IMG/VR virus record: IMGVR_UViG_3300032116_014939 | Span: 1-64,000 of that record | DNA: 64,000 nt | Reading direction: 5' to 3' (one strand) | Part shown: positions 3,957 to 20,708 of the stretch, piece by piece | Layout of the letters: the number at the start of each line of letters is the position of its first letter | Position numbering within the stretch: the stretch's first letter is position 1 | Program-made: the position numbers and the translations under genes | The notes under the pieces: model-generated | Told to the model about the DNA's origin: nothing | Seen by the model: only the letters and a program-made list of their open reading frames with translations | Database searches by the model: none

Positions 3957-3968
3957 ATTTTCCCAATA

Positions 3969-4017: not shown

Positions 4018-4039
4018 CCTTATATATTTGATGATACGA

Positions 4040-4153: not shown

Positions 4154-4182
4154 TGTTTTCTTATTAAATATCAATTGTTTTA

Positions 4183-4214: not shown

Positions 4215-4268
4215 TTTTTTTTCATTTTAGTTTCAAATTTTAAATAAAATTATTACTATTTACATAAT

Positions 4269-5482: not shown

Positions 5483-5494
5483 ATTAAATAAATA

Positions 5495-6234: not shown

Positions 6235-6254
6235 AAGGGAGCTAAGATACGAAA

Positions 6255-6668: not shown

Positions 6669-7099
6669 CGTCTAACACCAGGTTTAGAATTACCTCTCTG
6701 TGGTTCATTATTTCTTTTATAATGAGTTACATTTGGTTTAGGAGTATTGATAGTCGGTGAAGGATTGTTGTGTTGTGGTGGAGGTGGTGGTAACGGTAGT
6801 GTCGTCTGTTGATAGTTATAGTTTGGATAATAATTGTTGTTTCTATTATAGTAGTTATAGTCAGGATAGTTGTTGTAATACGTTACAGGTAATACAACTC
6901 TATTACCATAGTAATCCTCACTTGATACTGGTCTTGCTTTAGGTTCGTGATGAGTTACCCAAAACTCTTCAGTTCTGTTCCAATACATCTCATCATCTTC
7001 AGGTCTTGTTCTGTCGTCAGTTAGATTTTCAAAACTAGCACAAGATGTGAATAGTAAGATAAAAAATAATATGTTAAGATTTTTCAATTCCATAGACAC
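6665..7099 (-). CDS. Putative lipoprotein with Tyr/Asn/Pro-rich tail
   Basis: ILFFILLFTSC lipobox-like signal. Confidence 0.65.
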   Translation of the reverse strand: MSMELKNLNILFFILLFTSCASFENLTDDRTRPEDDEMYWNRTEEFWVTHHEPKARPVSSEDYYGNRVVLPVTYYNNYPDYNYYNRNNNYYPNYNYQQTTLPLPPPPPQHNNPSPTINTPKPNVTHYKRNNEPQRGNSKPGVRR

Positions 7100-8117
7100 G
7101 TCCTAAATTTCTTTTTAATTTTTTACCAGCTTTGTTAATTCTTGGTTCATACATTTTAAACAAATCGTAGATACTATTTGTTTTCTCTATGTCCCTTGGT
7201 ACTGTTTTATTAGTTTGTTTAGCAATTTGTCTATACTGTTTCATATAGAACTTATGTAAATTACTTAAATGAAACACAAGAGTGTCCTCACCACTTCTTT
7301 GTTTGATAACATCTACCAACCCATCAAAGAAGTTGTCAGCATTAAACTTTTCCATTTTATCAGCAATAAGCCAATATGGTGATTTTGTAAACTCTTCAGG
7401 TGTCATTTTAAATGATTTTGAATACGCTTCTTGTGACATAGCATTCAATTCATATGGTTCTGAATAATAAACTAAATCTAAAAAATCACTGTAATATTTG
7501 AAAATCTTTTTAGGAACATTCGGATTAATTCCACCAGCAAATGTTTTAGTTAAATCAACTTCACCCTTACCTGTTGACTCCCATCTTTTGTAAAACTCAT
7601 ATAGATGTAACATTTCGTGAGTAATACTATCTCTTAAGTCATCAATCAAATCATCAATATCTTCAGGTTCAAATGTAGGTGTTATTAAAACTTCAACTTC
7701 CATTTTACCTATGATAGTTTTATTAATTTCTTTCAGTATTTTTTCAGGTATTTCAAGTGACGGAAGTTTCATATAAGATTCACCTTCAGATTCTTTTTTA
7801 ATCTGATACATCGCCCCACCTGTTCTAAACTTAGCATCACTATTCGGTTTTTTTACATAACCAAATTTAATCTCAATATCCATTCCTTCAACAGGAAACT
7901 CAATAAATGAATCAGGGTCTGACTTAACAACCTGTTTCATAGTACTATAATCTAAATTAATTGACTCAGAATCATTTTTTTTATTGAATGTCATGTCTTC
8001 AACAATTGGTGTAACTTCATTAAGGACAATATTAATAAAAGGAATTGTTGCACGACTAACACCCAAATCTTCATTCAGTAATCTCTTATATTGTTCTTCG
8101 GTAATAACAACTTTCAT
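7074..8117 (-). CDS. Zincin-like (HExxH) putative metallopeptidase with MKVVITEEQ N-terminus
   Basis: ITHEMLHLYE, followed by an E-x-x-A third-ligand-like motif (ELNA). Confidence 0.6.
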   Translation of the reverse strand: MKVVITEEQYKRLLNEDLGVSRATIPFINIVLNEVTPIVEDMTFNKKNDSESINLDYSTMKQVVKSDPDSFIEFPVEGMDIEIKFGYVKKPNSDAKFRTGGAMYQIKKESEGESYMKLPSLEIPEKILKEINKTIIGKMEVEVLITPTFEPEDIDDLIDDLRDSITHEMLHLYEFYKRWESTGKGEVDLTKTFAGGINPNVPKKIFKYYSDFLDLVYYSEPYELNAMSQEAYSKSFKMTPEEFTKSPYWLIADKMEKFNADNFFDGLVDVIKQRSGEDTLVFHLSNLHKFYMKQYRQIAKQTNKTVPRDIEKTNSIYDLFKMYEPRINKAGKKLKRNLGRVYGIEKS

Positions 8118-8998
8118 TATAACAATGTATTAACTAAATTTTTAAATTCTTCTTTATTTTGTTCTATCCAATTTAAAATATCAGGTCTAATCTTTCCACC
8201 ATAAGGGCCAAAAATCTTGGCAACTTCCTCATCTCTTTGACTTACCTCCAAATATTCTTTACGTTCTTCATCACTTACAATTGGTTTAATAATATCAAAA
8301 GAACTTCCTTTTTTTATAAAAACATCTGATGAAACTCTTAACTCGTTAGAACCCAATTTTCTAGGTTTTCTTATATTACTAGCATCTGAAAACAATTCAA
8401 CCGCATTTTCTTTTGTTAAATAATACGTCTTTAACCTATCGTCAGATTCAAATGTAATAGATGTTATATCAACAAGTATTTTTCTTAAAATTTCTTTTTT
8501 ATATTCAGTCAAACTATCGTCATTAACCAAAAATAAATTGGTTCCTGTTATGTCATATTTTGATAAGGTATTTTTGATATTCGCAACCGCCTCACTACCT
8601 AAACTAGTTAAAGCAGTTGTAAAACCCCCTATTGATGGACTTTCAGTGTTGTCGTTTAAAAATTTTTGTTCAACCTCACCCTGATTTATTTTATAATCCC
8701 ATATACCACTTTTACTTTCATTAAGTGTTCCATTAAATAAACCCGCCATCAATCCTTCAATAGCGTGTCCTCTAATCTCTTTATACTTAACAATACGATT
8801 AATATAATCTTCAAATCTTAATCGGTTAACAACATTTAAACTATTCAAATCAACATCTTGACCCCAATTATAATTTAACCCGTAAGCGTCTAAAATTTCT
8901 TGGATAACATAAACCGCTTCCTGTTTAACAATAGGGATAGGATTGTATAGGTAAAATTTATTTTTACCTTCTTCATTTATAAGTTTTTTCTTTTTCAT
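8117..8998 (-). CDS. Hypothetical protein, possible PD-(D/E)XK-like nuclease
   Basis: RGHAIE...WDY...EQK spacing; function is only tentative. Confidence 0.55.
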   Translation of the reverse strand: MKKKKLINEEGKNKFYLYNPIPIVKQEAVYVIQEILDAYGLNYNWGQDVDLNSLNVVNRLRFEDYINRIVKYKEIRGHAIEGLMAGLFNGTLNESKSGIWDYKINQGEVEQKFLNDNTESPSIGGFTTALTSLGSEAVANIKNTLSKYDITGTNLFLVNDDSLTEYKKEILRKILVDITSITFESDDRLKTYYLTKENAVELFSDASNIRKPRKLGSNELRVSSDVFIKKGSSFDIIKPIVSDEERKEYLEVSQRDEEVAKIFGPYGGKIRPDILNWIEQNKEEFKNLVNTLL

Positions 8999-9315
8999 TA
9001 CTTACCAATCACAATATCATTGTAGTTTAAAGTTTCCATACCTTTCATATCATCAACCACTTCATCATACATGTAAGCCTTAACTACCGATACTATTGAT
9101 TGTTCAGCTTGAGCAATTTTAGATTCCATCCAATCATCTAACTGTTCATCCTCTTCTAAAATCTCCCACATTTGTAATGCTAAAGTACCAATGGTGAAAA
9201 GTTGTTGCTTAGCCATATAATTACCATCTTTATCTTCATTAATAGTTTCAGTATTTTCAGATAAAGCTTTTTTTAATTTTTCAAGTTGTTCTTCTGTGAT
9301 TATAATTTTTGACAT
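8998..9315 (-). CDS. Hypothetical protein (likely start MSKIIITEEQ at 9315)
   Basis: TATTTAT at 9332-9338 and a terminator at 9350-9377 argue against the 9363 start. Confidence 0.75.
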   Translation of the reverse strand: MSKIIITEEQLEKLKKALSENTETINEDKDGNYMAKQQLFTIGTLALQMWEILEEDEQLDDWMESKIAQAEQSIVSVVKAYMYDEVVDDMKGMETLNYNDIVIGK

Positions 9316-9420
9316 AACTATAGTTTTATATATAAATACAAATAAAACTAAAAAAGGGAACACTAATGTTCCCTTTTGAGCCCAACCCGGAAGTTAGTCC
9401 ACCACTTTGTTTAACAAAGA

Positions 9421-9681
9421 TTATTTAGCTTCTGAAAGTTTTGCTAAAACTTGTTCACTATATTGTACCAACTCCATTTCAGTCGTGATTAAAGATTCAA
9501 CCAAAATCTTGTGTGGGATATGTACTAATGTGTCTGTAACGTTAAAGTATCTAAATGCAACTCCGTTATCAATAGCATCATTTACAAGTTTTAAAAACAA
9601 CTTTGTCTGAATTGCATCAACAAAAGACATTGTTAATACTTTACCGAATTTTTCGTGTTGGATGTTTAATGTTACTTTCAT
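9421..9681 (-). CDS. Hypothetical protein
   Basis: 86-aa ORF; TATATTTG box upstream. Confidence 0.7.
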   Translation of the reverse strand: MKVTLNIQHEKFGKVLTMSFVDAIQTKLFLKLVNDAIDNGVAFRYFNVTDTLVHIPHKILVESLITTEMELVQYSEQVLAKLSEAK

Positions 9682-9699
9682 AACACAAATATAGACAAA

Positions 9700-10668
9700 C
9701 TATTCTTCACTTCCAAACTTTTTGAAATAAAAATCAATAGTTCTATCTAACCCTTCGTCAAAATTAACTTTAGGTTCCCATCCAATTTGTTCTTTTGCTT
9801 TAGTATAATCAATGGAGTATCTAAAGTCATGTCCTTTTCTATCTTCAACAAATGTTATTAAGTCCTGTGAGTTTTGTTCCCATTGTTTAAGATTATCAAT
9901 TTTATCACAAACCATCTTAACCAATCTGAGGTTATTTAATTCATTACCACCACCAATACAATAAGTTTCACCTACCTTACCTTTATGGAATACCAAATCA
10001 ATTGCATCCACATGGTCTTGGACATATAACCAATCCCTAACATTCTGTCCGTTACCATACACAGGTATTGGTTCACCATTAAGGATACTTTTAATGATTG
10101 TCGGAATTAATTTTTCTTCATGCTGGTTTGGCCCAAAATTATTTGAGCAGTTTGATATAACAATTGGTAATCCGTAAGTGTGATAATACGCTCTAACAAA
10201 ATGGTCAGAAGAAGCTTTAGACGCTGAGTAAGGACTTCTTGGGTCGTAAGCAGTTTTTTCATCAAAAGAACCCACAGCCCCTAAATGTCCAAAAACCTCA
10301 TCCGTTGATATATGGTAAAATAATTTAATACCATACTTAACAGAAGCATCCAACAAATTCAATGTTCCAATAATATTTGTTTGAACAAACTCCATCGGAT
10401 TTAGTATTGAGTTATCAACATGTGATTCAGCTGCAAAATGTATAACTGAGTCAAAATTATAATTTTCAAATAACTTAAATAATCTTTCTCTCTCAGTAAT
10501 ACTGAACTTAATTATTTTTGCGTTTTGACTATTTTCAATATTACCCTCATCAGCCGCATATGTTTCACTATCAAGGATAACTAAATTATAGTCAGGATAT
10601 TTCTTTTTAAAGGTATTATAAAAATTAGAACCAATAAAACCTAATCCACCAGTTATTAATATATTCAT
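9700..10668 (-). CDS. rfbB: dTDP-glucose 4,6-dehydratase
   Basis: TGGLGFIG, HFAAESHVD, STDEV, YSASK, NCSNNFGP, RDWLYV and DRKGHD motifs. Confidence 0.95.
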   Translation of the reverse strand: MNILITGGLGFIGSNFYNTFKKKYPDYNLVILDSETYAADEGNIENSQNAKIIKFSITERERLFKLFENYNFDSVIHFAAESHVDNSILNPMEFVQTNIIGTLNLLDASVKYGIKLFYHISTDEVFGHLGAVGSFDEKTAYDPRSPYSASKASSDHFVRAYYHTYGLPIVISNCSNNFGPNQHEEKLIPTIIKSILNGEPIPVYGNGQNVRDWLYVQDHVDAIDLVFHKGKVGETYCIGGGNELNNLRLVKMVCDKIDNLKQWEQNSQDLITFVEDRKGHDFRYSIDYTKAKEQIGWEPKVNFDEGLDRTIDFYFKKFGSEE

Positions 10669-10934
10669 TTCTCTATTTCAATTTTAAATTCAGTCTTGTT
10701 CTTACTGAAGTTTTCTTTAATAATAGAATTCCAACTCAATTCTGTTATGAATTTTTTGAACTCTTCATCTTTAATTTTCTTAATATAAGAAAGTAATTCC
10801 TGTTCGGTACAATTTGGATTAACATCCATAAACTGTTTAATAATTGGAAACTTGTCCAAGTCAATTTCCTCAAATTCCCTAACACCTTCGTATTGGTGTT
10901 TTTCAATAACACCCATTTTAATTTTCATATTCAA
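10665..10934 (-). CDS. Hypothetical protein
   Basis: 89-aa ORF. Confidence 0.6.
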   Translation of the reverse strand: MNMKIKMGVIEKHQYEGVREFEEIDLDKFPIIKQFMDVNPNCTEQELLSYIKKIKDEEFKKFITELSWNSIIKENFSKNKTEFKIEIEK

Positions 10935-10947
10935 TATAAAAATTATA

Positions 10948-10971
10948 ATCCCCCATGTTTCAGGGGGATTT
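10948..10971. terminator. Intrinsic terminator hairpin
   Basis: AATCCCCC-ATGTTTCA-GGGGGATT. Confidence 0.6.
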
Positions 10972-10973
10972 TA

Positions 10974-11444
10974 TTATTTAATAATTCTTGTTGTGTAAAA
11001 CTTACCACTATCGTCAGTAAGAGTAATAACATAAGTTCCATTACTTAATGTTTCAGAATCAAACTGAATGTTTTTAGTGAAATATTTTTCTTGATAAACA
11101 CATCTTCCATCAATAGACATAATTCTTAGTGTTCCACTATTTGATGGTGTGTTAATATTAACAATACCTGACACAGGGTTTGGCCAAACTTTAACATTGT
11201 TAGTTAATTCAGTTACATCAACGGTGCAAGGTCCTTCTGTGAAATTTACTATGCCGTGGTAATAGATAGCTTCGCATGAATTTCCATAAGTGATTCCATC
11301 ACATCCGCAAACAGGAGCCCAAATTGCCGGACACATGACATTTAAGTCAATGAGTGTGGAGTCAACACATGTCAATACTTGTGAAGAAGCACTCAATCCA
11401 ATGAATGCGAAAAGGGTTAAAAGAAATAATTTAATTTTTTTCAT
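10974..11444 (-). CDS. Secreted Kazal-type domain protein with T9SS type A C-terminal sorting domain
   Basis: Signal peptide; CPAIWAPVCGCDGITYGNSCEA...GPC Kazal motif; VWPNPV...GTYVI...RIIK sorting domain. Confidence 0.88.
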   Translation of the reverse strand: MKKIKLFLLTLFAFIGLSASSQVLTCVDSTLIDLNVMCPAIWAPVCGCDGITYGNSCEAIYYHGIVNFTEGPCTVDVTELTNNVKVWPNPVSGIVNINTPSNSGTLRIMSIDGRCVYQEKYFTKNIQFDSETLSNGTYVITLTDDSGKFYTTRIIK

Positions 11445-11455
11445 AGTTTGTTTTT

Positions 11456-11728
11456 TTATTTTTTATTATTTGAACACAATTTTGTTGGTTTGTATGGAAT
11501 GACTGGAGCATCTATATATCCTTGCCCGATAGTGTCATCTTGGAACTCACCTTCCAACATAAAAGGTATCAATTCTTTCATCGCTGAGTCATAGTATGGA
11601 TACGTAGTATCACACTTTTCTTTAACACAACAATCTTGTTTAGGAGTTTCATTTGTCTTATTGTCCTTACAGCTATTAATGAATAGTGTAATAAATAAGA
11701 ATACCAATAATAGTTTAATTTTATTCAT
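11456..11728 (-). CDS. Putative lipoprotein
   Basis: Hydrophobic N-terminus ending in FINSC. Confidence 0.6.
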   Translation of the reverse strand: MNKIKLLLVFLFITLFINSCKDNKTNETPKQDCCVKEKCDTTYPYYDSAMKELIPFMLEGEFQDDTIGQGYIDAPVIPYKPTKLCSNNKK

Positions 11729-11787
11729 ATCATGTAATTTTAACTAATAATAGAATAATAGAATGATATAATCAACATATTAATCAG

Positions 11788-11811
11788 AAACCCCCTGTTT
11801 AGAGGGGGTTT
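11788..11811. terminator. Intrinsic terminator hairpin after the endolysin
   Basis: AAACCCCCT...AGGGGGTTT. Confidence 0.65.
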
Positions 11812-11814
11812 AGA

Positions 11815-12657
11815 TTATTTAAGTAGGTTATAATACTCGTTGAAGTGCTTTATTCTATCTGGTAGACCTATCGTACCACCATTAACTCTTTTGGTAACTG
11901 CCGTGACAGTCGCAACATCAGCACCCTTATCACAAATAGACCAAAGTTTGTTTGAATCAAAGAAAAACGCCGCAGAAGCCAAAGGATATTTAGTAGCAAC
12001 TAAATCAGGATTAGACACAGTATCTTCACCAATGAACTTAGCAAAGTTTGTATAGTTATTCTTACCAGTCAATTGGATATATCCTCTTCCACGAAACTTG
12101 AAACCTTCACCTGTTGACTCATCACCATTACCCATTCTTCCACCATAAACACGTGAAGCAATCTTTTCAGGTTGACGAGCGTATGACTCGTTTAAGTTAC
12201 CAGGGAAATACTTACCAAAGATTTTCTTAAGTCCGTCAGCAGAATAGTTAAGGTTTTCAGAAACAGCTTTAAACCCTCCTGACTCGTGACCACACTGAGC
12301 CAAGAAATGAGCCAATCTTAATGGGTTAGTGATATTGAATTTTTTAGCAGTTTCAGGGATTTGAGCAATCACTGCGTCAGGAATATGTCCTTTAAGATTT
12401 TGTAATTTAAATTCAGAACTTGTTGGGATAACAACATCTTCTTTAATCACTTGAGCTGTTTGAGTTGTTGTTCCAAACATTTTAGACCAAGTTCCTTCAC
12501 CAACAATACCATCAGCAGTTAATCCGTTAGCCGCCTGCCATTCTTTAACTTTAGCCGCAGTTCCGTTACCGAAAATACCATCGGCAGTTAATCCTAGTTT
12601 TGCTTGGAGTTGTTTAACGTCTTCTCCCTTAGACCCAACTTTTAGTAACATAATCAA
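11815..12657 (-). CDS. Endolysin: peptidoglycan-binding domain plus GH19 chitinase/lysozyme-like domain
   Basis: LLKVGSKG...DGIFG...DGIVG PG-binding domain; AHFLAQCGHESG, RGRGYIQLTG and VNGG GH19 motifs. Confidence 0.92.
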   Translation of the reverse strand: MIMLLKVGSKGEDVKQLQAKLGLTADGIFGNGTAAKVKEWQAANGLTADGIVGEGTWSKMFGTTTQTAQVIKEDVVIPTSSEFKLQNLKGHIPDAVIAQIPETAKKFNITNPLRLAHFLAQCGHESGGFKAVSENLNYSADGLKKIFGKYFPGNLNESYARQPEKIASRVYGGRMGNGDESTGEGFKFRGRGYIQLTGKNNYTNFAKFIGEDTVSNPDLVATKYPLASAAFFFDSNKLWSICDKGADVATVTAVTKRVNGGTIGLPDRIKHFNEYYNLLK

Positions 12658-12692
12658 TAATTTTTATTATAAATATGTTTAAAGTAAGGAAA

Positions 12693-12878
12693 TTAAGCCG
12701 CCATAATCCAAGTTAAGAGCGAAGCAAATATGAAAAAGAATAAAATTCCCACCCAGATAATACCAGAATTAGAATTTTTTTTATTATTTTTTTTATTATA
12801 AAATTTTCTAACTTCCTCTCCTAACTCATAATTGTTAGGATATTTTTTAACCAATTCTTCAATATCTTGTGGTATCAT
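12693..12878 (-). CDS. Small membrane protein
   Basis: C-terminal TM helix. Confidence 0.6.
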   Translation of the reverse strand: MIPQDIEELVKKYPNNYELGEEVRKFYNKKNNKKNSNSGIIWVGILFFFIFASLLTWIMAA

Positions 12879-12880
12879 AA

Positions 12881-13105
12881 TTATTTTTTTGTATAAATAT
12901 AAAAGTGTTCACCAATATCTACCGTATATCTTTCCATGAACTTACCCTGACAAGCCTCCTTAAGTTTTGGAGTTAAAGCAAAATGTTCATCCTCATCCAA
13001 TGTAGGTTGAAGTCTAATCTCATACTCCATCTTATATGGAAGTTCCTTTTGTGTCACCACCGCCCATGATGGTAATACCTCTTTAAGATTTTCTAATATT
13101 GTCAT
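12881..13105 (-). CDS. Hypothetical protein
   Basis: 74-aa ORF; TATTTAT upstream. Confidence 0.65.
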   Translation of the reverse strand: MTILENLKEVLPSWAVVTQKELPYKMEYEIRLQPTLDEDEHFALTPKLKEACQGKFMERYTVDIGEHFYIYTKK

Positions 13106-13126
13106 AGTTTATAAGTGTCTATAAAT

Positions 13127-13150
13127 AAAAAAACCCGTCAATTGACAGGT
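13127..13150 (-). terminator. Terminator of the large ncRNA
   Basis: ACCTGTCA/TGACGGGT inverted repeat followed by a U-tract. Confidence 0.65.
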
Positions 13151-13161
13151 CAGATTAAAAA

Positions 13162-14030
13162 AGCCTGAGATTACAGCTTATGTTGAGAATCTTTTGAAGT
13201 ATTATTGTTTCACTTCGTATCCACTTCCTTTTGAGAAGTACTTCTCAGTCACGGTCTTTTAGGTGTACCACTCCTTGAGGTCTAAGTTACTCTCTTCTTA
13301 CTCAACTCTTTCCGAGGTTGCCACCCCAGTTCGTCCTTGCGGGATTAAAGGTTTTTCGTAAAACTACAGTCAGACTTGGGGTCTTTCTGTGCAATGAACG
13401 GCTCATTACTATGTAGTGACCTTTCACCTAAACCTGATGGACACTTTTCCTTAGTTATTTTGTAATAATGTTAGGTTTGTGTAGTAGATGTGTCAGAGTA
13501 GTGGTCCAACATAAGCTCTGTCTCCTTTTGAGCGACAGAATACTAAACTACTCCGTGAAGTGTCCCCACCTCCATATTTCAAGATTACTTCATAAAGAGA
13601 CCTTGGTAGGTCTTCCTTAGGGATAGTAGCGACACCACTCGTTCTCCATCTTACCTTTCGGTTTTAAGTCCTCTATCATATTGGGACCCGCAATAGTGTA
13701 ACTGGATGGTCACATTTCTTACAGAGTTCCTATGGGTTATTCTTATTGTTCTTCCGAACTCAACTTGAGAATCTACTTTCCCAAGTCACCCTCCCATTTT
13801 CCCTACGAAGTTATCCTCGGTACTAAAGGTTTGGTGATATCCCACTTGTGTACTTGAGTTCTCTACCCCTCACGGGGTTTCGAACCGCAGTCTCCTCAAC
13901 ACAGGGGAGACCACTTTATCCTACTTTCGTAGTTTATTTAAGGACCATACACGGCCCATTATCGTTTATCAGATTAAATGTCTCATAATCAACCCGAAGG
14001 TCTCATAATCAACTACTGAATGGATAATCT
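13162..14030 (-). ncRNA. Large (~870 nt) structured ncRNA, probably GOLLD-like
   Basis: No ORF of 60 aa or more; GC higher than the flanks; many GNRA/UUCG hairpins; 11-bp long-range helix; bounded by promoters, boxA and a terminator. Family call rests on size and context only. Confidence 0.7.
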
Positions 14031-14034
14031 TTTT

Positions 14035-14206
14035 GTTTCAAAGAACGTATCGGACATTTCCGATTTGTTTTACAAACTTACGACTTTTTTTTCAATCTGT
14101 CAAGTAATTTGTGAACTTTTTTTTTGATTTAACTACCGAGTATCTTTCATTCCCTATAAGTGTTAAATCTTTTACAAACTTACAGCAAATATTCCGTAGT
14201 GTCAAA
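14035..14206 (-). promoter_or_regulatory. Tandem Bacteroidota-type promoters plus boxA-like element for the large ncRNA
   Basis: TAAGTTTG at 14073-14080 and 14175-14182, each with TTG(AC) 20 nt upstream; CGTTCTTTGAAAC at 14035-14047. Confidence 0.7.
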
Positions 14207-14223
14207 TAAATATATCGAAAAAA

Positions 14224-14634
14224 TCAAAAATTTAACACGTCAGTTAAAACTTCCTTAATACCTGATGACATATTAAGTTCTTTAATCTCTTCTAAAGTCA
14301 TATAATCACATTCTGTGTGCTCAAAACCGTCCATAGCATTCTCTAAATCAGGAATGATTTTGGTGTCAGTCTTTAAAAGGAATACATGTAGAATAGTTTT
14401 TATCCCACCTAATTTATTATAACGATTAATTTTACCCAAAGGTTTAATATCTTCCTCAACTGGAACACCCATCTCCTCATAGAACTCTCTATACGCTGCA
14501 TCCTTTGGGTCTTCACCTTCTTCTATTCCACCCATAGGTATTGCCCACTTTGATGGTTCATTAATCTCAGCAGTTCTCTTACAAACTAAACATTTATCAT
14601 TTACTTTCACAATTATTCCAGCACTTTGTTTCAT
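14224..14634 (-). CDS. NUDIX hydrolase
   Basis: GGIEEGEDPKDAAYREFYEEMG Nudix box. Confidence 0.92.
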   Translation of the reverse strand: MKQSAGIIVKVNDKCLVCKRTAEINEPSKWAIPMGGIEEGEDPKDAAYREFYEEMGVPVEEDIKPLGKINRYNKLGGIKTILHVFLLKTDTKIIPDLENAMDGFEHTECDYMTLEEIKELNMSSGIKEVLTDVLNF

Positions 14635-14654
14635 AGAAATATTTATTAATAAGT

Positions 14655-15002
14655 ATGTTGTTAAAAATAAATAAAAATAGTTTTAATGTCAAAGTATTAA
14701 TTGAAAGTTCTGAAACCAGTGAAGGTATGATGAACAAAACTTTTGACAATTTTGACGGTATGTTGTTCATCATGGGTGATGGTTCACATAGTTTTTGGAT
14801 GATGAATTGTATTATCCCTTTAGATATAATCTTTATTGATAAGAACTTTAAAATAACTAAAATACATCATTACTGTGAGCCATGTGAGGTTCAACCTTGT
14901 GAAAGGTTTGTAGGTAAAGGAATGTATGTCTTAGAACTTGAGGGTGGTTCTTGTGAAGAGTTAGGTATCAGAGAAGGACAAGTTTGTGAATTCTTTAAAT
15001 AA
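14655..15002 (+). CDS. DUF192-family protein
   Basis: GMLF...FWMMN...PLDIIFID...YVLEL.GG pattern. Confidence 0.85.
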   Translation: MLLKINKNSFNVKVLIESSETSEGMMNKTFDNFDGMLFIMGDGSHSFWMMNCIIPLDIIFIDKNFKITKIHHYCEPCEVQPCERFVGKGMYVLELEGGSCEELGIREGQVCEFFK

Positions 15003-15003
15003 A

Positions 15004-16407
15004 TTACTTACTTTCTTCAATCTTCTGTTGTAAAACATTAACAAATCTATTCTGTAACATCTTCAAAAACTTGATATAAGGTGAGTCTTCTTTTTCAGAC
15101 TCGTACTTGTACTTACCTTGTGGTGGTCTCTTACTTCTTCCAATATAATTTAATCCTGATATATTTGTAATACACTTGTGTCCACCTGAATTGGCTTGGA
15201 TAACTTCCCATACAGGAACTGAAACACTATCTAACACACTCCATTCTTCTTCAGTCAGTTCAGTTGATTTCTTTTCCATCAAAGATTTAATATCCATAAG
15301 TTCCTCAACACCATCTTTTTTATCCAAGTATTTGTCTCCGTATATTGCAGCAAAATCTTTAAAGGTAAATCCAACTGACTCTTCTTTTGCAGCAGTTTCA
15401 GAAACCCATTTAATTGTTGATAGTGGAACTTGTTTTTCTTTTAATTGTGATTCCCAATGTCCCAATACTTCTTGAGCAATTTCTCCCAAGTTAACACCTT
15501 TAAGTTCTCTTTCTTTTTTGAAAGGGTTACATGACGCTTGTAATAAACCAAGTGGCCAAGCAATAACAAGGAAGTCTGCTTCAGGGTTGTTTCTAAATGG
15601 GGTGTATCTATCATATGAGCCAGGTTTCATCATACTTCCACCACCATATTGAACAATAATATTATCTTTAACCTGAACATTCTTATGTCCTTTCATTGTC
15701 TGAACATAATCTTCTTTATTCTTTTCTAATGAAGATATGTCAGCATACCTATTTGTCTTCATTAATTCCTTAATCTTATTGAAGATTGAGAGGAGTGAAG
15801 GTTTACAATCTAACACTAATGTCTCTAAAAACCCTGGTTTACTTTTGAATGCTAATAATAATTTGTTTGTAACCAAACCTAATAACATTCTATTTTCTTT
15901 AGCACTCTTTTCTTTTGATGTCCCATAAACATAATTCATCACCATTTCAGGTGTGATGTTTTTGGAAGCGTAATCAGCACTATCAACCATAGATATTGTC
16001 GCAACATCTTCAGGTGTAAAAATTTCAGAAGCCGGAACAATCTGTGATAGAGTTTCAACATTTGAACGAGCTCCTCTGAACTGAGTTGACTTAGTTTCGT
16101 CAGCTCCGGCTTGTCTATCGTGGTGGTCGGTATGAACCACAAACATTGGTTTTCCGTGAGCAAAGTCTACAAGGACTGGCATAATTTCACCTTCAGCATC
16201 TGCTTTCTTAACCGCAAATTCCTTATCTCCGTATTGGATTACTTCAACATCAACAACTTTGATTCCGTTGTCTTCTAAATACTTTTTCATCGCTAATGCA
16301 GTTGCAACACCGTCTAAATCTTGGTGGAAGTATATCTTCGCTTTTTTGTATCTATCAGAAAGTTCTCTTATGTTTCTGATACCACCTTCGGAAATTATCT
16401 TTTTCAT
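15004..16407 (-). CDS. DHH-family phosphoesterase-like protein (likely start MKKIISE at 16407)
   Basis: HQDLDG, VDFAH, TDHHD and GGH motifs; TATTTAT at 16413-16419. Confidence 0.7.
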   Translation of the reverse strand: MKKIISEGGIRNIRELSDRYKKAKIYFHQDLDGVATALAMKKYLEDNGIKVVDVEVIQYGDKEFAVKKADAEGEIMPVLVDFAHGKPMFVVHTDHHDRQAGADETKSTQFRGARSNVETLSQIVPASEIFTPEDVATISMVDSADYASKNITPEMVMNYVYGTSKEKSAKENRMLLGLVTNKLLLAFKSKPGFLETLVLDCKPSLLSIFNKIKELMKTNRYADISSLEKNKEDYVQTMKGHKNVQVKDNIIVQYGGGSMMKPGSYDRYTPFRNNPEADFLVIAWPLGLLQASCNPFKKERELKGVNLGEIAQEVLGHWESQLKEKQVPLSTIKWVSETAAKEESVGFTFKDFAAIYGDKYLDKKDGVEELMDIKSLMEKKSTELTEEEWSVLDSVSVPVWEVIQANSGGHKCITNISGLNYIGRSKRPPQGKYKYESEKEDSPYIKFLKMLQNRFVNVLQQKIEESK

Positions 16408-16482
16408 TAATAATAAATATTGTAACAAAAAAAAAGTTCATCATTACGATGAACCTTTTAAAGTAAAAAAGTAATATACCTC

Positions 16483-16854
16483 TTATTTTAAAGTTAACAA
16501 GTATTTCAACTTGTTAATTTCCGCTAACATTTCGTCTCTAATGTTTAATAAATCCGAGTCCATCTTTGGGTCATAGTCTTCAGACAATCCAACCAAATAT
16601 TCACAAACTGAATTGATATATTCAGTTAACTCAAGTTCTTCAATATCACTACCACCTAAAGTATATCCACCTGAAAAACTAGGTCTTCCGTGTTTACCCA
16701 TACAAACTTCAACAAACTTATCAATCAAATCATCAAGTGATTCGTATATTCCACCATAAGCAGAATGTCTAGCAAATGATTTTGTTTGCCAGTGTAATAC
16801 TCTGAATTGAGTTTGTGTTTCTAATAAAAATTTAACAACTTCCGAATTTTTCAT
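16483..16854 (-). CDS. Ferritin/Dps-like four-helix protein (DUF5856-like)
   Basis: LHWQT.SFARH...Y..L.DLIDKFVE...G pattern. Confidence 0.8.
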   Translation of the reverse strand: MKNSEVVKFLLETQTQFRVLHWQTKSFARHSAYGGIYESLDDLIDKFVEVCMGKHGRPSFSGGYTLGGSDIEELELTEYINSVCEYLVGLSEDYDPKMDSDLLNIRDEMLAEINKLKYLLTLK

Positions 16855-16898
16855 TACAATATTTTATTATAAATATATCAATAAATGAAAAATGGTGG

Positions 16899-17756
16899 TT
16901 ATTGACCCCCATTTTCAAATTCTAATTTCTGTTGACTCTTTTGGTCAACAAAACTTTGTATTCGTTGTTTAGCAATTTCACAATAGTTTTCACTCAATTC
17001 AATACCAACCCATCTTCTGTCATGAACAACTGCCGCCACACAACTGGTTCCTGAGCCATTGAAAGGGTCTAAAACAATATCATTTCTATATGATAATATC
17101 TTAATTGCCTTTTCGGGAATATCCATCGAGAACGTTGCCTTTGTTAATGAACGAGTGTCAGCAAAGTATTTCCATTGTCCAAACACCAATTCCATAAACT
17201 CTTTCTTATCTTGTTCAGAATAAGCAACTTTGTTCTTCCCTTCTTCGGTTAGATAAGGTTCACCCTTCCATTGTGGTTCACCTTTAACTTTCTTGATGTG
17301 ATTTTTCTTATAAGCAAGTATCACACATTCTTTTGGGTTGTAGATGTAAGGAGCTGATGGACTCATCCAAGAACCCCAAGCGGTTGTCTTACTTCTATGT
17401 GGTGAGTTCTCTTCAAGGTCAACAATACCATAAAACTTAAACCCAACTTTTTTCATCACCTGATAAAGTTCTGAAGCGAAGAATACTCTACCACCTCTGT
17501 CCTGTACGTTAACTTCATAGGGTATGTTAATCGCAATCCTACCGTCATCTTTTAATAAACGATAAGCCTCAGTTAACCATTTCTTCGACCACTTCCAATA
17601 TTCATCCATAACAATTTCATCGTTATGTGTATCGTATTGGATACCTACATTATATGGTGGTGATGTTACAATCAAGTCAACCCAACCTTCAGGCATTTCA
17701 CTCATCACCTCAATGGTATCACCATTCAGGACTCTGTTAATATAATTCTCAATCAT
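16899..17756 (-). CDS. DNA methyltransferase (N4-C/N6-A, beta class)
   Basis: VTSPPYN precedes VLDPFNGSGTS. Confidence 0.92.
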   Translation of the reverse strand: MIENYINRVLNGDTIEVMSEMPEGWVDLIVTSPPYNVGIQYDTHNDEIVMDEYWKWSKKWLTEAYRLLKDDGRIAINIPYEVNVQDRGGRVFFASELYQVMKKVGFKFYGIVDLEENSPHRSKTTAWGSWMSPSAPYIYNPKECVILAYKKNHIKKVKGEPQWKGEPYLTEEGKNKVAYSEQDKKEFMELVFGQWKYFADTRSLTKATFSMDIPEKAIKILSYRNDIVLDPFNGSGTSCVAAVVHDRRWVGIELSENYCEIAKQRIQSFVDQKSQQKLEFENGGQ

Positions 17757-17977
17757 TCTGTAATTTTTCTATCTTTTTTTCAATATACCATATGGCTTTC
17801 TTCAAGTCCTGAACCACGTTATCTTTTTTACCTGCACGTGATAGGTATTTAACCGCGTTACCCAAATAAAAATCTTTATCTAAATCCCAAGCGTCGATTA
17901 CTTTGATTGCTTCATATGGATTATCTTTACCACCATAGTGTGATGGGTGATTAACCATTTCTTTTTGTTCTGACATA
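17749..17977 (-). CDS. DUF3310-family protein
   Basis: VNHPSHY...GNAVKYLSRAGKK...DLKKA.WY; likely start MSEQKE. Confidence 0.85.
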
Positions 17978-18151
17978 ATATTCTTTTCCATATTTACTTT
18001 CTTCAAGTGTACCCTCACTTACAAGTTTTTCAATTCGTTTTCTTGTTTCATCGATTCCAACTCGTAGGATATAATCAGAAATATAATTAATATGAACTGG
18101 TTTTTCAAGTTTTCTTAACAGAACTTCACTAGGGTCTACATTGTTTCTCAT
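17951..18151 (-). CDS. Small hypothetical protein, possibly winged-HTH
   Basis: ORF, likely ATG at 18151. Confidence 0.55.
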   Translation of the reverse strand: MRNNVDPSEVLLRKLEKPVHINYISDYILRVGIDETRKRIEKLVSEGTLEESKYGKEYYVRTKRNG

Positions 18152-18299
18152 ACTCTTTAAATTTTTTGGCAACATCGTTATTTGTGAAAATGATGGAATC
18201 GGCTTTGAGGTAGTGATTAATAATAGTTAAATCTTTTTCTAAACTTTTGATTTGTTCTTCCCCTATTATTTTTTTGTTGAATCCCATATTACAAAAATA

Positions 18300-19061
18300 C
18301 TAATCTTTTTTTAGATTTACAATTGTTTTTTTCTGAATTATGTAACTTAATACCTTTCTTTTAAAGATTGGTAGAAGTGTGTTTTCAAATGGTAGGTCGT
18401 TGGATGACATTAATTCAAAGATGGGTAAACTTATATCTTGAGTTAATTCATTTAATATTGTTCTGATTACCTTTTTACTTTCACCATCAAATATCAACTG
18501 AACCGAAAACTTACTGTCGTGTTTAACCGTATCAATACCGCCAGTTGTATATTTCCAAATCTTTTTGTTGTTTCCGTTAAGTGTAAAGAAGTAACCTCTT
18601 TCTAAATCCTGTTTCTTATTTTCGTTGGTGTGTTTGATTGAAACCGAGTCGTAGGTTAGTGTCCAAAGAGCTTTGATAACATTAAAGTATTCAAAAAACT
18701 TCGGTCCAGCATATTTTAATATCTTATTTAATTCTTCCAACTCATCGTCATTTAATGCTGGGATGGGTGTGAATTTAAGTTCATTAATTAATATTTCATC
18801 ATCAATAACTTCAAACTTCTTGTTAACAACGATGTATTTAAACTCCGAAGACATCACTTGTAGATTAGCCAAGTGTAATGACATTTCACTAAATAAGGGA
18901 TATAACTCAAACTTCTCAATCTTATCGTCACAGAACTTTAAAAAGTCCATCAACATATAATATTTGTGTTCGTAGTCAATTGGTTCTGTTAATAACCAGT
19001 CTGTCGTTAATCTGAAATGATTATTTTTTTTCGTTCTTCTTTTTTTTGGTTTGGTTTCCAT
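18300..19061 (-). CDS. Hypothetical protein
   Basis: 253-aa ORF. Confidence 0.8.
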   Translation of the reverse strand: METKPKKRRTKKNNHFRLTTDWLLTEPIDYEHKYYMLMDFLKFCDDKIEKFELYPLFSEMSLHLANLQVMSSEFKYIVVNKKFEVIDDEILINELKFTPIPALNDDELEELNKILKYAGPKFFEYFNVIKALWTLTYDSVSIKHTNENKKQDLERGYFFTLNGNNKKIWKYTTGGIDTVKHDSKFSVQLIFDGESKKVIRTILNELTQDISLPIFELMSSNDLPFENTLLPIFKRKVLSYIIQKKTIVNLKKD

Positions 19062-19062
19062 T

Positions 19063-20364
19063 TTACCCTTCTATTTGTAAAATGTAATATGTTTCATCAT
19101 TAAATTCAATAGTATCGTAATCACCATCGTAAGTGTTCAATGTGTGACCGATACCATCAGAACGAAGTAATCCTTCTTTGAACCCTTGTGTGTCTATATA
19201 ATTTTCAATCTCCAAACCATAATTTTCTATTACGCTCATAGGGTCATCAACCAAATCATTAACTAAATCTTCAACCTTTTCCTCAATTAAATTTTCAGGA
19301 ATAGTTTTATCACTATCTTTTAATTCATCCAACTCTTCGTTTAATTCATCATATTGTTCTTGTGATAAATTTTCCGAATCTTTCAAAAACAATTCAATTT
19401 CTTCAATTCTTTCTTGAACTGCTGGGTCTTCATATTCAAACTCATCTTCATCAAAATAGTCTTCTAAATTTTCTCTTACATTATCTTCTTCACTCTCTCT
19501 AAAATAGTCTTTAAGTTCTTCAACATCAATATAATCTTCAACAAAACTTTGATTAAAACCTTTCATTCCAATATCATCAATTAATTCATCAATTCTTTCA
19601 TATGCGGACATGTGGGTGTCGTAATTATCACCAACCGCCCATCTTTCTTTTGATTCTTCTAAGTCGTTGGTTAACACATAGAAAACTCTCATACTATAAT
19701 ATTTGTAGGCGTAAACCAAGTTATATACGTCAATTCTTTTTTCAAGGTATTCAATTTCTTCTTCAACCGCTTCTAAATCCATCAGATTTTCATTATCTTC
19801 CGTTTCTCTTTCAATTTCTTCCATTCTTTCTTTTTCAGCGTAAAGTTGTTGTAACCTAGCATCATCACCAGGTTCTTTAGCCTCATAATCACCAGAAGAT
19901 GAAGTCAAAAATTCAAATAAAACATTTGCCAAAATCGCAATCTCACTAGTTGCAGTTTCTAAATTCCACTCGTCCTCTTGTCGTAAATCGTTTTGTTTGG
20001 CTAATTCAATCTGTCTTTGTTTTTTGATTTGAATTTTTTCATACGGTGTTCCATATGTTGAAATATACTTATATTTAACACCCTCAAGAGAATTAATATT
20101 GGTATATGATAAATCTAAACTACCATTAACTGTGATATTTGTGATGTTATTAGCATCCGTATTTCTCAGACTTAAATCACCATCAATAACAATTCGTTTA
20201 CCTCTGAATTGTTTCATATTTTGAACCAATTTACCGTTATAATTAGTGAACTTTAAAAAATTAATATATTGCTCAGGTGTTATAACAACACTCTCTTGTC
20301 CTTCTTCCTCAACCAACATCTGAACAACCTTTTGTATTTGTGATATATCTATACTAACTCTCAT
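19063..20364 (-). CDS. Acidic hypothetical protein with a short LRR-like segment
   Basis: IDGDLSLRNT...VNGSLDLSYTNINSL; TATTTAT upstream. Confidence 0.75.
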   Translation of the reverse strand: MRVSIDISQIQKVVQMLVEEEGQESVVITPEQYINFLKFTNYNGKLVQNMKQFRGKRIVIDGDLSLRNTDANNITNITVNGSLDLSYTNINSLEGVKYKYISTYGTPYEKIQIKKQRQIELAKQNDLRQEDEWNLETATSEIAILANVLFEFLTSSSGDYEAKEPGDDARLQQLYAEKERMEEIERETEDNENLMDLEAVEEEIEYLEKRIDVYNLVYAYKYYSMRVFYVLTNDLEESKERWAVGDNYDTHMSAYERIDELIDDIGMKGFNQSFVEDYIDVEELKDYFRESEEDNVRENLEDYFDEDEFEYEDPAVQERIEEIELFLKDSENLSQEQYDELNEELDELKDSDKTIPENLIEEKVEDLVNDLVDDPMSVIENYGLEIENYIDTQGFKEGLLRSDGIGHTLNTYDGDYDTIEFNDETYYILQIEG

Positions 20365-20454
20365 GATAAAAATTATATTAATAAATATTAAAATAACTAT
20401 ATTATTTACTATTAAATCACATGTGGTAAATATTTATAATAAAATACCAACAAC

Positions 20455-20580
20455 ATGGGATGTGGATGTAAAAAACAAAACGCTTCACCTGAACAGGTGA
20501 AAAAGTTAAGAACTGAGAGTATTAAAAACGCAGTTCAGAGTACTATTGATAAGTACTACAACAAAAACAAGAAAAAGTAA
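20455..20580 (+). CDS. 41-aa basic peptide MGCGCKKQNASPEQVKK...
   Basis: ATG 20455 to TAA 20580; TATTTAT at 20431-20437. Confidence 0.65.
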   Translation: MGCGCKKQNASPEQVKKLRTESIKNAVQSTIDKYYNKNKKK

Positions 20581-20604
20581 TAAACCTCTAATAAATTAAA
20601 AACA

Positions 20605-20646
20605 ATGAAAAACAACGGCGGTGGTGGTTGCGGATGTGGAAAATAA
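20605..20646 (+). CDS. 13-aa micropeptide MKNNGGGGCGCGK
   Basis: A-rich initiation context, GCGC motif shared with the upstream ORF, terminator at 20671-20696. Confidence 0.45.
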   Translation: MKNNGGGGCGCGK

Positions 20647-20708
20647 TCTTTCCCGCAACATAAGAAAACTAAAAGGGGAATTTTTCCCCTTTTTTTATAT
20701 TTATAATT

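What the first reader, a model, noticed from the sequence alone, without database searches (positions are those of the whole stretch)
13127..14206. Stand-alone ~870-nt ornate RNA gene transcribed like an rRNA operon (GOLLD-like or new)
Seen: about 1.1 kb without ORFs in an otherwise packed genome. It has two identical TAAGTTTG promoter boxes about 100 nt apart, a boxA-like sequence and a terminator. Inside are many GNRA/UUCG hairpins (CUAC-GAAA-GUAG, ACC-GAAA-GGU, CCCC-GUGA-GGGG, CC-GCAA-GG) and a perfect 11-bp long-range helix (AGCUUAUGUUG near 13507-13517 with CAACAUAAGCU near 13175-13185). Established: GOLLD RNAs are ~800 nt, occur in phage and lake sequences often near tRNAs, and have no known function. 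Inference: this is a highly expressed GOLLD-type RNA, here separated from the tRNA array and next to the endolysin.
Basis: partly seen in the sequence, partly recalled or inferred. Interest (0 to 1): 0.72.

Follow-up and report, generated by a model that had tools for sequence, protein, structure and literature searches.

The report
GOLLD RNA gene with rRNA-style leader
The gene-free 1.1 kb is a GOLLD RNA, a known giant phage RNA of unknown function that builds RNA-only cages, here in a 242-kb lake phage, abundant in lake RNA samples and preceded by rRNA-operon-style start signals.

Summary
The Rfam GOLLD model (RF02032) matches window 13555..13162 on the minus strand at 313 bits (cut-off 150). 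No other Rfam family matches credibly.

The part upstream, 13959..13556, is colinear with the 5' domain of GOLLD env-38, whose 14-chain cage was solved by cryo-EM. In 62 related phage sequences it shows strong covariation: 83 of 125 predicted pairs carry compensatory changes.

In four freshwater metatranscriptomes, contigs over 13170..14004 reach depths of hundreds to 20,000. The flanking genes reach 0-5.

The gene has two tandem Bacteroidota-type promoters, each TTGAC-N18-TAAGTTTG, 102 nt apart. A covarying hairpin follows, then an invariant GTTCTTTGAA. That motif is identical to the boxA found 75-210 nt upstream of 16S rRNA in Bacteroidota genomes. An intrinsic terminator ends the gene.

The "perfect 11-bp helix" is real in the sequence but not conserved: a 99.5%-identical relative breaks it. 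The position next to the endolysin is shared only by the closest relatives.

Many relatives carry a tRNA-Met gene, often initiator-like, directly beside the RNA. This copy has a terminator instead.

Verdict: a new member of a known family, with an rRNA-like leader that I found no published link for.

The parts
14175..14205 (-). Upstream promoter P1. -33 TTGAC at 14205..14201; -7 box TAAGTTTG at 14182..14175; predicted start near 14170.
   Evidence: Exact match to TTGAC-N18-TAANTTTG. One of only 3 such sites in the 242-kb record. TAnnTTTG at -12 to -5 is the sigma-A consensus of flavobacteria (PMC9723704). 28 of 64 unique sequences have two or more such promoters.
14073..14103 (-). Downstream promoter P2. 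-33 TTGAC at 14103..14099; -7 box TAAGTTTG at 14080..14073; predicted start near 14068.
   Evidence: The TTG and TA..TTTG columns are more than 90% conserved across 64 sequences. 56 of 64 have such a promoter, usually ending 26-28 nt before the boxA.
14049..14064 (-). Leader hairpin AUCGG-AAAUGU-CCGAU, in a boxB-like position just before the boxA.
   Evidence: Compensatory variants occur in relatives (UCUC..GAGA, UCAG..CUGA, CAGG..CCUG, UUGG..CCAA). Tandem promoters in the 16S leader of a Niabella genome (phylum Bacteroidota) are each followed by the same hairpin-then-boxA-like order.
14037..14046 (-). boxA-like motif GUUCUUUGAA, nearly invariant in the clade.
   Evidence: Present 59-122 nt upstream of the core in 60 of 64 unique sequences. 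GTTCTTTGA(A/C) lies 75-210 nt upstream of 16S rRNA in 7 of 30 sampled Bacteroidota leaders, where about 0.05 would be expected by chance. It lies outside the env-38 cryo-EM construct.
13970..14030 (-). Variable leader segment. It holds UUAUCC, a short UCAG/CUGA helix, a GACC-UUCG-GGUU hairpin, and two direct repeats GUUGAUUAUGAGAC (14013..14000 and 13993..13980).
   Evidence: Low conservation (0.39-0.64) and many gaps. Length varies among relatives. The small helices covary. Direct reading.
13556..13959 (-). GOLLD 5' domain (forms the cap of the cage in env-38).
   Evidence: Colinear with the env-38 construct from its first base. An env-38 20-mer matches exactly at 13930..13911 and a 29-mer matches with 1 mismatch at 13764..13736. 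RNAalifold: 96 pairs, 68 with compensatory changes. Ribosum alifold: 125 pairs, 83 with double changes, 95.5% of cells paired against 36-41% when the partner is slid.
13162..13555 (-). GOLLD 3' domain (the part covered by the Rfam model).
   Evidence: RF02032: 313.2 bits, E 8.6e-89, model positions 1-416 of 416, not truncated.
13440..13497 (-). A-rich unpaired linker after the first hairpin of the 3' domain. No tRNA is inserted here.
   Evidence: Aligned to the unpaired model positions 64-136. The same region holds a tRNA-Gly in Caulobacter phage Ccr34. The env-38 paper describes the linker as disordered and facing the cage interior.
13278..13435 (-). Span bounded by the family's conserved long-range helix: 13435..13426 pairs with 13287..13278 (10 bp).
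   Evidence: This is the outermost nested helix of the Rfam structure line. All 10 pairs in the window are standard or G-U (direct reading).
13311..13346 (-). Two adjacent hairpins whose loops carry self-complementary GC. They most likely correspond to the L21a and L21b kissing loops that bridge chains in env-38.
   Evidence: The first loop reads CGCAA in 46 of 64 sequences, GUCGAA in 14 and CAUAA in 4, so the core is GC, (U)CG(A) or AU, always self-complementary. The second loop keeps GC in all 64. The paper reports the same GC/CG switching for L21a at residues 656-657. My residue mapping is approximate.
13125..13151 (-). Intrinsic terminator GACCUGUC-AAUU-GACGGGUU followed by U7.
   Evidence: In many relatives a tRNA-Met occupies this position instead.
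13507..13517 (-). Not conserved.
   Evidence: Broken in L025, L004 and L022. The L025-type letters at 13509, 13511 and 13519 are also seen in RNA contigs.

Best explanation
This is a GOLLD RNA gene (Rfam RF02032) on the minus strand of a 242-kb freshwater phage record. The host is most likely a member of the Bacteroidota.

Shown:
- The 3' domain (13555..13162) matches the family model in full.
- The 5' domain (13959..13556) is homologous to that of the structurally solved GOLLD env-38 and is held in place by extensive covariation.
- RNA from this locus and close relatives is far more abundant in lake metatranscriptomes than RNA from the neighbouring genes.
- The gene has its own signals: two tandem host-type sigma-A promoters, a leader hairpin, a motif identical to the host rRNA-leader boxA, and an intrinsic terminator.

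Inferred mechanism:
1. Host RNA polymerase starts at P1 and P2.
2. The nascent hairpin-boxA leader recruits the NusB/S10 antitermination complex, as in rRNA operons. This gives fast, termination-resistant and folding-friendly synthesis of a roughly 0.95-1.05 kb precursor.
3. The leader may then be trimmed.
4. The roughly 800-nt core assembles without protein into a homo-14-mer cage like env-38. The loops that carry self-complementary GC, which bridge chains in env-38, are kept here.

What the cage does is unknown. My best guess is that it acts on the translation apparatus, holding or organising tRNA, initiator tRNA or ribosomes during infection. The reasons are that the gene is wired like a stable-RNA gene, that its relatives sit directly beside tRNA-Met and near tmRNA genes, and that a pull-down of ribosomes with GOLLD has been cited.
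For: Identity: (313 bits, full model). (colinear with env-38, shared blocks).

Structure: (68 of 96 pairs compensated). (83 of 125 pairs with double changes, 95.5% paired, against 36-41% in slid controls).

Family size: (88 full-length homologues, 63 unique, in viral contigs).

Expression. Summed depth over 13170..14004 is 1,300-20,800 in X16, 1,800-15,300 in X18, 1,280-5,140 in X19 and 11-198 in X15. The flanks give 0-5. Near-identical contigs reach depths of 604 and 815, against 3 for an exact endolysin contig in X16.

Promoters.

boxA. The same promoter and boxA-like logic precedes the phage's tRNA array.

Host phylum: a T9SS sorting-domain protein at 10974..11444. The only database relatives are uncultured phage genomes of 634-735 kb.

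Cage contacts: together.

Link to translation: tRNA-Met beside the RNA in at least 25 unique relatives, many of them initiator-like. The paper's statements on tRNAs in the linker and on the ribosome pull-down.
Against: The RNA evidence comes from assembled contigs. They carry no strand and no true ends, and they pool all relatives that are at least 90% alike. Transcript ends, leader trimming and the share contributed by this exact phage are therefore not established.

Nus-factor binding to the boxA was not tested.

The boxA is invariant even where a tRNA rather than a promoter precedes it (L002), which leaves room for a role within the RNA itself. The one GOLLD checked from another host phylum, Caulobacter phage Ccr34, has no boxA-like motif nearby, so the leader is clade-specific.

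Cage formation is inferred from homology, not measured. The biological function is a guess.
Confidence: 0.8

Rival explanations
1. The invariant GUUCUUUGAA is not a transcription signal. Instead it is a structural strand of the RNA, for example a closing helix with the invariant GAAG at 13591..13588, and its match to the host boxA is coincidence.
For: RNAalifold pairs CUUUG (14043..14039) with (U/C)GAAG (13592..13588) in all 62 sequences. The motif is kept in L002, where a tRNA-Met directly precedes it.
Against: There are no compensatory changes, because both sides are invariant. A second fold pairs the motif with a different partner, 13857..13850, and pairs GAAG with the core strand around 13668..13666. 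The env-38 cryo-EM construct starts about 80 nt downstream of where the motif would be and still forms the 14-mer. Identity of 11 nt with Bacteroidota 16S-leader boxA has roughly a 2e-4 chance for a 900-nt RNA. A near-copy sits in front of the tRNA array.
Confidence: 0.15
2. The stretch is a long structured 5' leader that controls the downstream small ORFs and the endolysin, so it is a lysis-timing element rather than a stand-alone RNA gene.
For: It has the same orientation as the 74-aa ORF, the 61-aa ORF and the endolysin. The paper states that GOLLD expression rises at lysis of phage-infected cells.
Against: A strong terminator lies between them. RNA depth falls from thousands to 0-14 at 13169 and stays at 0-5 over the lysis genes. 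The endolysin is adjacent only in L025 and L034. Many other relatives have a tRNA-Met or unrelated genes there.
Confidence: 0.04
3. It belongs to another large RNA class (ROOL, group I or II intron, RNase P, tmRNA), or it is a decayed, non-functional remnant.
For: None was found.
Against: A permissive Rfam scan at E<=1 lists only GOLLD, plus a 23.8-bit CRISPR-repeat hit that is below its cut-off of 40. Covariation, conservation across 63 unique sequences and high RNA abundance argue against decay.
Confidence: 0.01

Closest known systems
GOLLD env-38 (marine metagenome scaffold JCVI_SCAF_1096627009515/1239-410; cryo-EM homo-14-mer, Nature 2025, PMC12286853)
   Same: Both domains are colinear. 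Blocks of the 5' domain are identical or nearly so (20 of 20 and 28 of 29 bases). The 3' domain belongs to the same Rfam family. The core length is similar (798 nt against about 830 nt). The loops that bridge chains keep self-complementary GC.
   Different: env-38 lies downstream of a tRNA-Met, whereas this copy has its own two promoters, a hairpin-boxA leader and a terminator. This one comes from a freshwater phage of a likely Bacteroidota host. Several peripheral hairpins differ in length. For example, the CCCC-GUGA-GGGG extension at 13877..13866 is missing in most relatives.
GOLLD of Caulobacter phage Ccr34 (phiCbK-like, KY555147)
   Same: An Rfam GOLLD match in a phage of more than 200 kb, within a cluster of tRNA genes and a permuted tmRNA gene.
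   Different: It scores only 165 bits and has a tRNA-Gly inserted in the linker. No boxA-like motif lies nearby. The host is an alphaproteobacterium.
GOLLD of a phage/prophage in which expression rises at host-cell lysis (cited in PMC12286853)
   Same: Same family, phage-borne, and an abundant transcript.
   Different: It could not be compared here, because that sequence is not in the collections I could reach.
ROOL RNA
   Same: A large ornate phage RNA, often near tRNAs, that forms an RNA-only cage (an 8-mer).
   Different: Unrelated sequence and fold. No Rfam ROOL match here.
Bacterial rRNA-operon leader (tandem promoters, boxB hairpin, boxA, Nus-factor antitermination)
   Same: Tandem promoters, a hairpin and then a boxA identical to the Bacteroidota 16S-leader motif, at a similar distance from the structured RNA.
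   Different: It drives a phage RNA that is not ribosomal. No boxC or spacer boxA was sought. Factor binding is untested.

Membership tests
GOLLD RNA (Rfam RF02032) | Covariance-model score at or above the curated gathering score, over the whole conserved 3' domain | tested here: met
   313.2 bits against a cut-off of 150. Model positions 1-416 of 416, not truncated.
GOLLD RNA (Rfam RF02032) | Consensus helices of the 3' domain, including the outer long-range helix | tested here: met
   13435..13426 pairs with 13287..13278: 10 of 10 standard or G-U pairs. There are few non-standard pairs across the alignment to the model.
GOLLD RNA (Rfam RF02032) | A large structured 5' domain of about 400 nt, less conserved than the 3' domain | tested here: met
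   13959..13556 is colinear with env-38. 83 of 125 predicted pairs have compensatory changes, and 95.5% of cells are paired against 36-41% in slid controls.
GOLLD RNA (Rfam RF02032) | Total length near or above 800 nt | tested here: met
   The core is 798 nt. Predicted primary transcripts are about 945-1045 nt.
GOLLD RNA (Rfam RF02032) | Encoded in phages or prophages, often near tRNA genes | tested here: met
   The source is a 242-kb virus record. A tRNA array lies 9 kb away. A tRNA-Met sits beside the RNA in at least 25 unique relatives.
GOLLD RNA (Rfam RF02032) | Transcribed as an abundant RNA | tested here: met
   Four metatranscriptomes: depth over the gene is hundreds to 20,000 against 0-5 on the flanks. 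The contigs give no strand and no ends.
GOLLD RNA (Rfam RF02032) | Protein-free homo-14-mer cage with D7 symmetry | not testable with these tools
   Indirect only: the loops that bridge chains stay self-complementary (GC, UCGA or AU) across the clade.
ROOL RNA and other large RNAs (group I/II introns, RNase P, tmRNA) | An Rfam model match over this stretch | tested here: not met
   No match at E<=1 other than GOLLD and one sub-threshold CRISPR-repeat hit.
rRNA-operon-type antitermination leader | A boxA sequence matching that of the host's rRNA leaders | tested here: met
   GTTCTTTGAA at 14046..14037. GTTCTTTGA(A/C) lies 75-210 nt upstream of 16S in 7 of 30 Bacteroidota leaders, and related forms in 12 of 30.
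rRNA-operon-type antitermination leader | A hairpin (boxB-like) next to the boxA, and tandem promoters | tested here: met
   Hairpin 14064..14049 with compensatory variants. Two promoters here, and two or more in 28 of 64 sequences. The Niabella (Bacteroidota) 16S leader has the same modules.
rRNA-operon-type antitermination leader | NusB-S10 binding and termination-resistant transcription | not testable with these tools
   The complex-prediction job was not folded. A binding assay or a reporter is needed.

The most novel reading that the evidence does not exclude
In this large clade of freshwater Bacteroidota phages, GOLLD is produced as a true stable RNA through the host's rRNA antitermination machinery (hairpin plus boxA, NusB/S10). 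That machinery also chaperones co-transcriptional folding and cage assembly. Together with the tight linkage to initiator-like tRNA-Met genes, this would place the GOLLD cage in a phage take-over of translation initiation. It would also give the first handle on how, and for what purpose, these RNA cages are made.
Probability: 0.3. Interest if true: 0.6.

Novelty: new member of a known kind. Interest (0 to 1): 0.42.

Why it matters
GOLLD is one of the largest bacterial or phage non-coding RNAs. It forms a protein-free 14-chain cage, yet its function is unknown.

This locus adds no new kind of element, but it offers four useful handles:
- A stand-alone copy with clean, host-type start and stop signals.
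- A 63-sequence clade with both domains alignable to the solved structure. This gives rich covariation, including self-complementary loop switching that supports the contacts between chains.
- Evidence from natural lake communities that the RNA vastly outnumbers neighbouring phage transcripts.
- An rRNA-style leader and a recurrent initiator-like tRNA-Met neighbour, both of which point toward the translation apparatus.

These make specific experiments possible: Nus-factor dependence, assembly of this variant, and tRNA or ribosome binding.

Tried and rejected
1. A scan of 185,579 species genomes with the pattern that found 107 viral loci gave 91 loci, but none is a GOLLD by nhmmer. They were chance matches. 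I reused them only as handles to reach Bacteroidota genomes.
2. A GOLLD model search in 151 sampled Bacteroidota genomes found nothing. The tool itself warns that this does not show absence.
3. An exact 37-mer of env-38 was not found in the viral contigs. A full computed alignment to env-38 was therefore not made, because its sequence has no reference and I did not type it. Comparison was by reading and by two short blocks.
With E. coli references it was accepted but not folded. This is no evidence either way.
6. Pairing of the boxA with GAAG was considered and set aside, because the partner differs between folds and the motif is absent from the env-38 construct.
7. The endolysin link was tested by synteny and is not conserved.
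8. The 474-aa neighbour has only a weak DHH/RecJ-like N-terminal match and no relative in the PDB by sequence. Its relatives are only in uncultured phage genomes of 634-735 kb.
9. A search of papers for GOLLD together with boxA found nothing relevant.
Full report
WHAT IS THERE. The window is the first 64 kb of a 242,064-bp virus record, estimated 82% complete. Between a 74-aa ORF (12881..13105) and a NUDIX gene (14224..14634), both on the minus strand, lies 1.1 kb with no ORF longer than 50 aa. Scanning the whole window against Rfam gives one non-tRNA match: GOLLD (RF02032) at 13555..13162 on the minus strand. It scores 313.2 bits against a gathering score of 150 (E 8.6e-89) and covers model positions 1-416 of 416. 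A permissive rescan of 12900..14400 at E<=1 adds only a 23.8-bit CRISPR-repeat hit on one hairpin, well below its cut-off of 40.

THE 5' HALF. The Rfam model covers only the conserved 3' domain. The pattern GAGTTGAGTAANNNNNGAGTA found 107 loci in viral contigs. Of these, 88 align to the window's RNA over almost its full length by nhmmer, giving 63 unique sequences. Identities are 99.5%, 94%, 90% and 88% for the four closest, and 59-75% for the rest. The supplement of the cryo-EM paper gives the GOLLD env-38 construct. Its first base corresponds to window 13959, and the two RNAs run in parallel from there. An env-38 20-mer is found exactly at 13930..13911, and a 29-mer with one mismatch at 13764..13736. 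On the 62-sequence alignment of the 5' part, RNAalifold predicts 96 pairs, 68 of them with at least one compensatory double change. A second fold with ribosum scoring gives 125 pairs, 83 with double changes, and 95.5% of cells paired. When the 3' partner is slid by 1-3 columns, only 36-41% of cells pair and 26-37 pairs show double changes. So the 5' domain is a real, conserved structure of the same type as in the solved GOLLD.

All four tetraloop hairpins are present. The 11-bp complement between 13517..13507 and 13185..13175 is also present, but it is not a conserved helix. Only the window and L034 have it. L025 is 99.5% identical and differs at only six positions in the whole region, yet two of those differences break this helix. 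Over 45 distinct sequences the best complementary run between the two segments averages 5.2, against 5.1 for shuffles. The L025-type letters also appear in RNA contigs. Both arms fall in segments that the family model leaves unpaired. The family's long-range helix is 13435..13426 with 13287..13278.

TRANSCRIPTION SIGNALS. TAAGTTTG occurs at 14182..14175 and at 14080..14073. Each copy lies within an identical TAAGTTTGTAAAA, and each has TTGAC exactly 18 nt upstream. TAnnTTTG at -12 to -5 is the sigma-A consensus of flavobacteria (PMC9723704), which puts the predicted starts near 14170 and 14068. In the whole 242-kb record, TTGAC-N17-19-TAnnTTTG occurs three times: these two sites and one in front of the tRNA array. 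The downstream promoter is conserved across the clade. 56 of 64 unique sequences have such a promoter, and 28 have two or more.

After P2 comes a hairpin (14064..14049) that shows compensatory variants in relatives. Then comes GTTCTTTGAA (14046..14037), present in 60 of 64 sequences 59-122 nt upstream of the core. GTTCTTTGA(A/C) lies 75-210 nt upstream of the 16S gene in 7 of 30 leaders, and related forms in 12 of 30. About 0.05 exact matches would be expected by chance. One leader, from a Niabella genome (phylum Bacteroidota), has three tandem TAnnTTTG promoters, each followed by a hairpin and AGTTCTTA(G/A)AA, and then AAGTTCTTTGAAAG at -148. The architecture of promoter, hairpin and boxA is therefore that of host rRNA leaders. 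A near-copy, GGTTCTTTGAC, precedes the phage's first tRNA.

The motif lies outside the env-38 construct, which assembles into the cage without it. Its predicted pairing partner also changes between folds. I therefore read it as a transcription signal rather than a structural strand. That it recruits NusB/S10 is inference. The one attempt at complex prediction was not folded. A GOLLD from another host phylum, in Caulobacter phage Ccr34, has no such motif nearby, so the leader is specific to this clade. The gene ends with an 8-bp hairpin and a run of U at 13151..13125.

EXPRESSION. Six freshwater or river metatranscriptome runs hold 41-52% of the sampled words of the RNA. I laid four of them, from four different studies, on 11500..16500 at 90% likeness or better. 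Summed contig depth over 13170..14004 is 1,300-20,800 (X16), 1,800-15,300 (X18), 1,280-5,140 (X19) and 11-198 (X15). The genes on either side give 0-5, and 14172..15800 gives 0. Near-identical contigs exist at depth 604 (239 nt, 3 differences) and 815 (127 nt, 0 differences). An exact contig of the endolysin gene in X16 has depth 3. The RNA is thus a few hundred times more abundant than its neighbours' transcripts.

There are caveats. These are assembled contigs without strand or true ends, and the depths pool relatives. The roughly 100-fold lower depth over the leader (27-60 in 14005..14171) could therefore mean trimming, or only that leaders differ among the relatives that dominate these samples.

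CONTACTS BETWEEN CHAINS. The cryo-EM paper supports the 14-mer with loops that pair with their own copy on a neighbouring chain. L21a switches its central dinucleotide between GC and CG, and L21b is conserved. In this clade the hairpin at 13346..13332 has loop CGCAA in 46 sequences, GUCGAA in 14 and CAUAA in 4. The core is always self-complementary: GC, (U)CG(A) or AU. The next hairpin keeps GC in all 64 sequences. Residue mapping to env-38 is approximate (model position about 237, residue about 652-657). The pattern is nevertheless what an intermolecular kissing contact predicts, and the window carries the GC form.

SURROUNDINGS. Downstream lie two small ORFs and an endolysin with PG_binding_1 and GH19 domains. 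That neighbourhood is shared only by L025 and L034. Upstream, the module MTase, 123-aa ORF, 474-aa ORF, DUF192 and NUDIX is found next to the RNA in 14-31 of the loci. The tRNA array (14 genes, none for Met) begins 9 kb away. In relatives, a tRNA-Met (anticodon CAT) lies within 15 nt of the RNA's 3' end in at least 14 unique sequences, and 30-500 nt upstream in about 11, including the 634,780-bp uncultured phage LR745206. Many of these have initiator hallmarks: CGCG...GCAAC ends and a GGG/CCC anticodon stem. The window's lineage has replaced that tRNA with a terminator. ARAGORN calls tmRNA genes near the RNA in six relatives, and at 208565..208959 of this record.

A T9SS sorting-domain protein, the promoter type and the boxA type all point to a Bacteroidota host. 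The only database relatives of the neighbouring 474-aa protein are uncultured phage genomes of 634-735 kb. The RNA was not found in 151 sampled Bacteroidota genomes.

HOW IT MOST LIKELY WORKS. Shown: a GOLLD gene with its own host-type promoters, an rRNA-like leader and a terminator, abundant in natural communities. Inferred: Nus-factor-modified transcription, possible leader trimming, and protein-free assembly into a 14-chain cage as for env-38. Guessed: a role on the translation apparatus. The grounds are the stable-RNA wiring, the tRNA-Met and tmRNA neighbours, tRNAs inside the linker in other phages, and the cited ribosome pull-down.

NOVELTY. The element is a new member of a known family, so the finding is largely explained. 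The rRNA-type leader, the in-situ abundance, the self-complementary loop switching in a new clade and the initiator-like tRNA-Met linkage are incremental additions. A search of the paper library for GOLLD together with boxA found nothing relevant.

Noticed in passing
window 3970-4213 (minus strand): The tRNA array has its own CTTGAC-N18-TACTTTTGTAAAA promoter. A leader of about 200 nt follows, with a hairpin plus a T9 run, and then a boxA-like GGTTCTTTGAC directly before the first tRNA (Asn, 3956). This is the same logic as at the GOLLD gene. The leader could hold another small RNA.
   Followed up: partly
related loci, e.g. L017:8675-8747, L041:6263-6333, L003:5607-5680, L002:3956-4029: A tRNA-Met (CAT) gene lies within 15 nt of the 3' end of the GOLLD in at least 14 unique relatives, or 30-500 nt upstream in about 11. 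Many look like initiator tRNA (CGCG...GCAAC ends, GGG/CCC anticodon stem). The window's own lineage lacks it, and no tRNA-Met is found in the 242-kb record.
   Followed up: partly
window 13980-14013 (minus strand): There are two direct repeats GUUGAUUAUGAGAC, 20 nt apart, around a UUCG hairpin. Each contains UUAUGAG, the exact complement of the 7-nt tRNA-Met anticodon loop CUCAUAA. The motif is altered in several relatives, so this may be chance.
   Followed up: partly
window 14224-17756: A gene module is conserved upstream of the GOLLD in 14-31 related loci: NUDIX hydrolase, DUF192 (opposite strand), a 474-aa protein with only a weak DHH/RecJ-like N-terminal match, a 123-aa ORF and a DNA methyltransferase. 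These could be partners or processing factors of the RNA. This was not tested.
   Followed up: partly
G000:C1:208565-208959 (outside the window); L017, L042, L073, L082, L096, L020; L240:2268-2586: tmRNA genes are called in this phage record and near the GOLLD in six relatives. Caulobacter phage Ccr34 has a permuted tmRNA beside its GOLLD. GOLLD tends to sit in islands of stable-RNA genes.
   Followed up: no
window 10974-11444 (minus strand): A 156-aa protein has a Kazal-type protease-inhibitor motif and a T9SS C-terminal sorting domain. It looks like a secreted, host-like protein and is a marker of a Bacteroidota host.
   Followed up: no
window 1214-1301 and 1525-1615: Rfam scores the tRNA at 1216-1301 as tRNA-Sec by 1 bit (48 against 47), while ARAGORN calls it tRNA-Ser (tga). 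ARAGORN also calls a 91-nt tRNA-Pro (cgg) that Rfam does not list, and Rfam lists a tRNA at 1833-1899 that ARAGORN does not.
   Followed up: no
window 9700-10668 (minus strand): A nucleotide-sugar epimerase/dehydratase gene (GDP-mannose 4,6-dehydratase family, E 1e-85) is carried by the phage. It is probably an auxiliary gene for surface-sugar metabolism.
   Followed up: no
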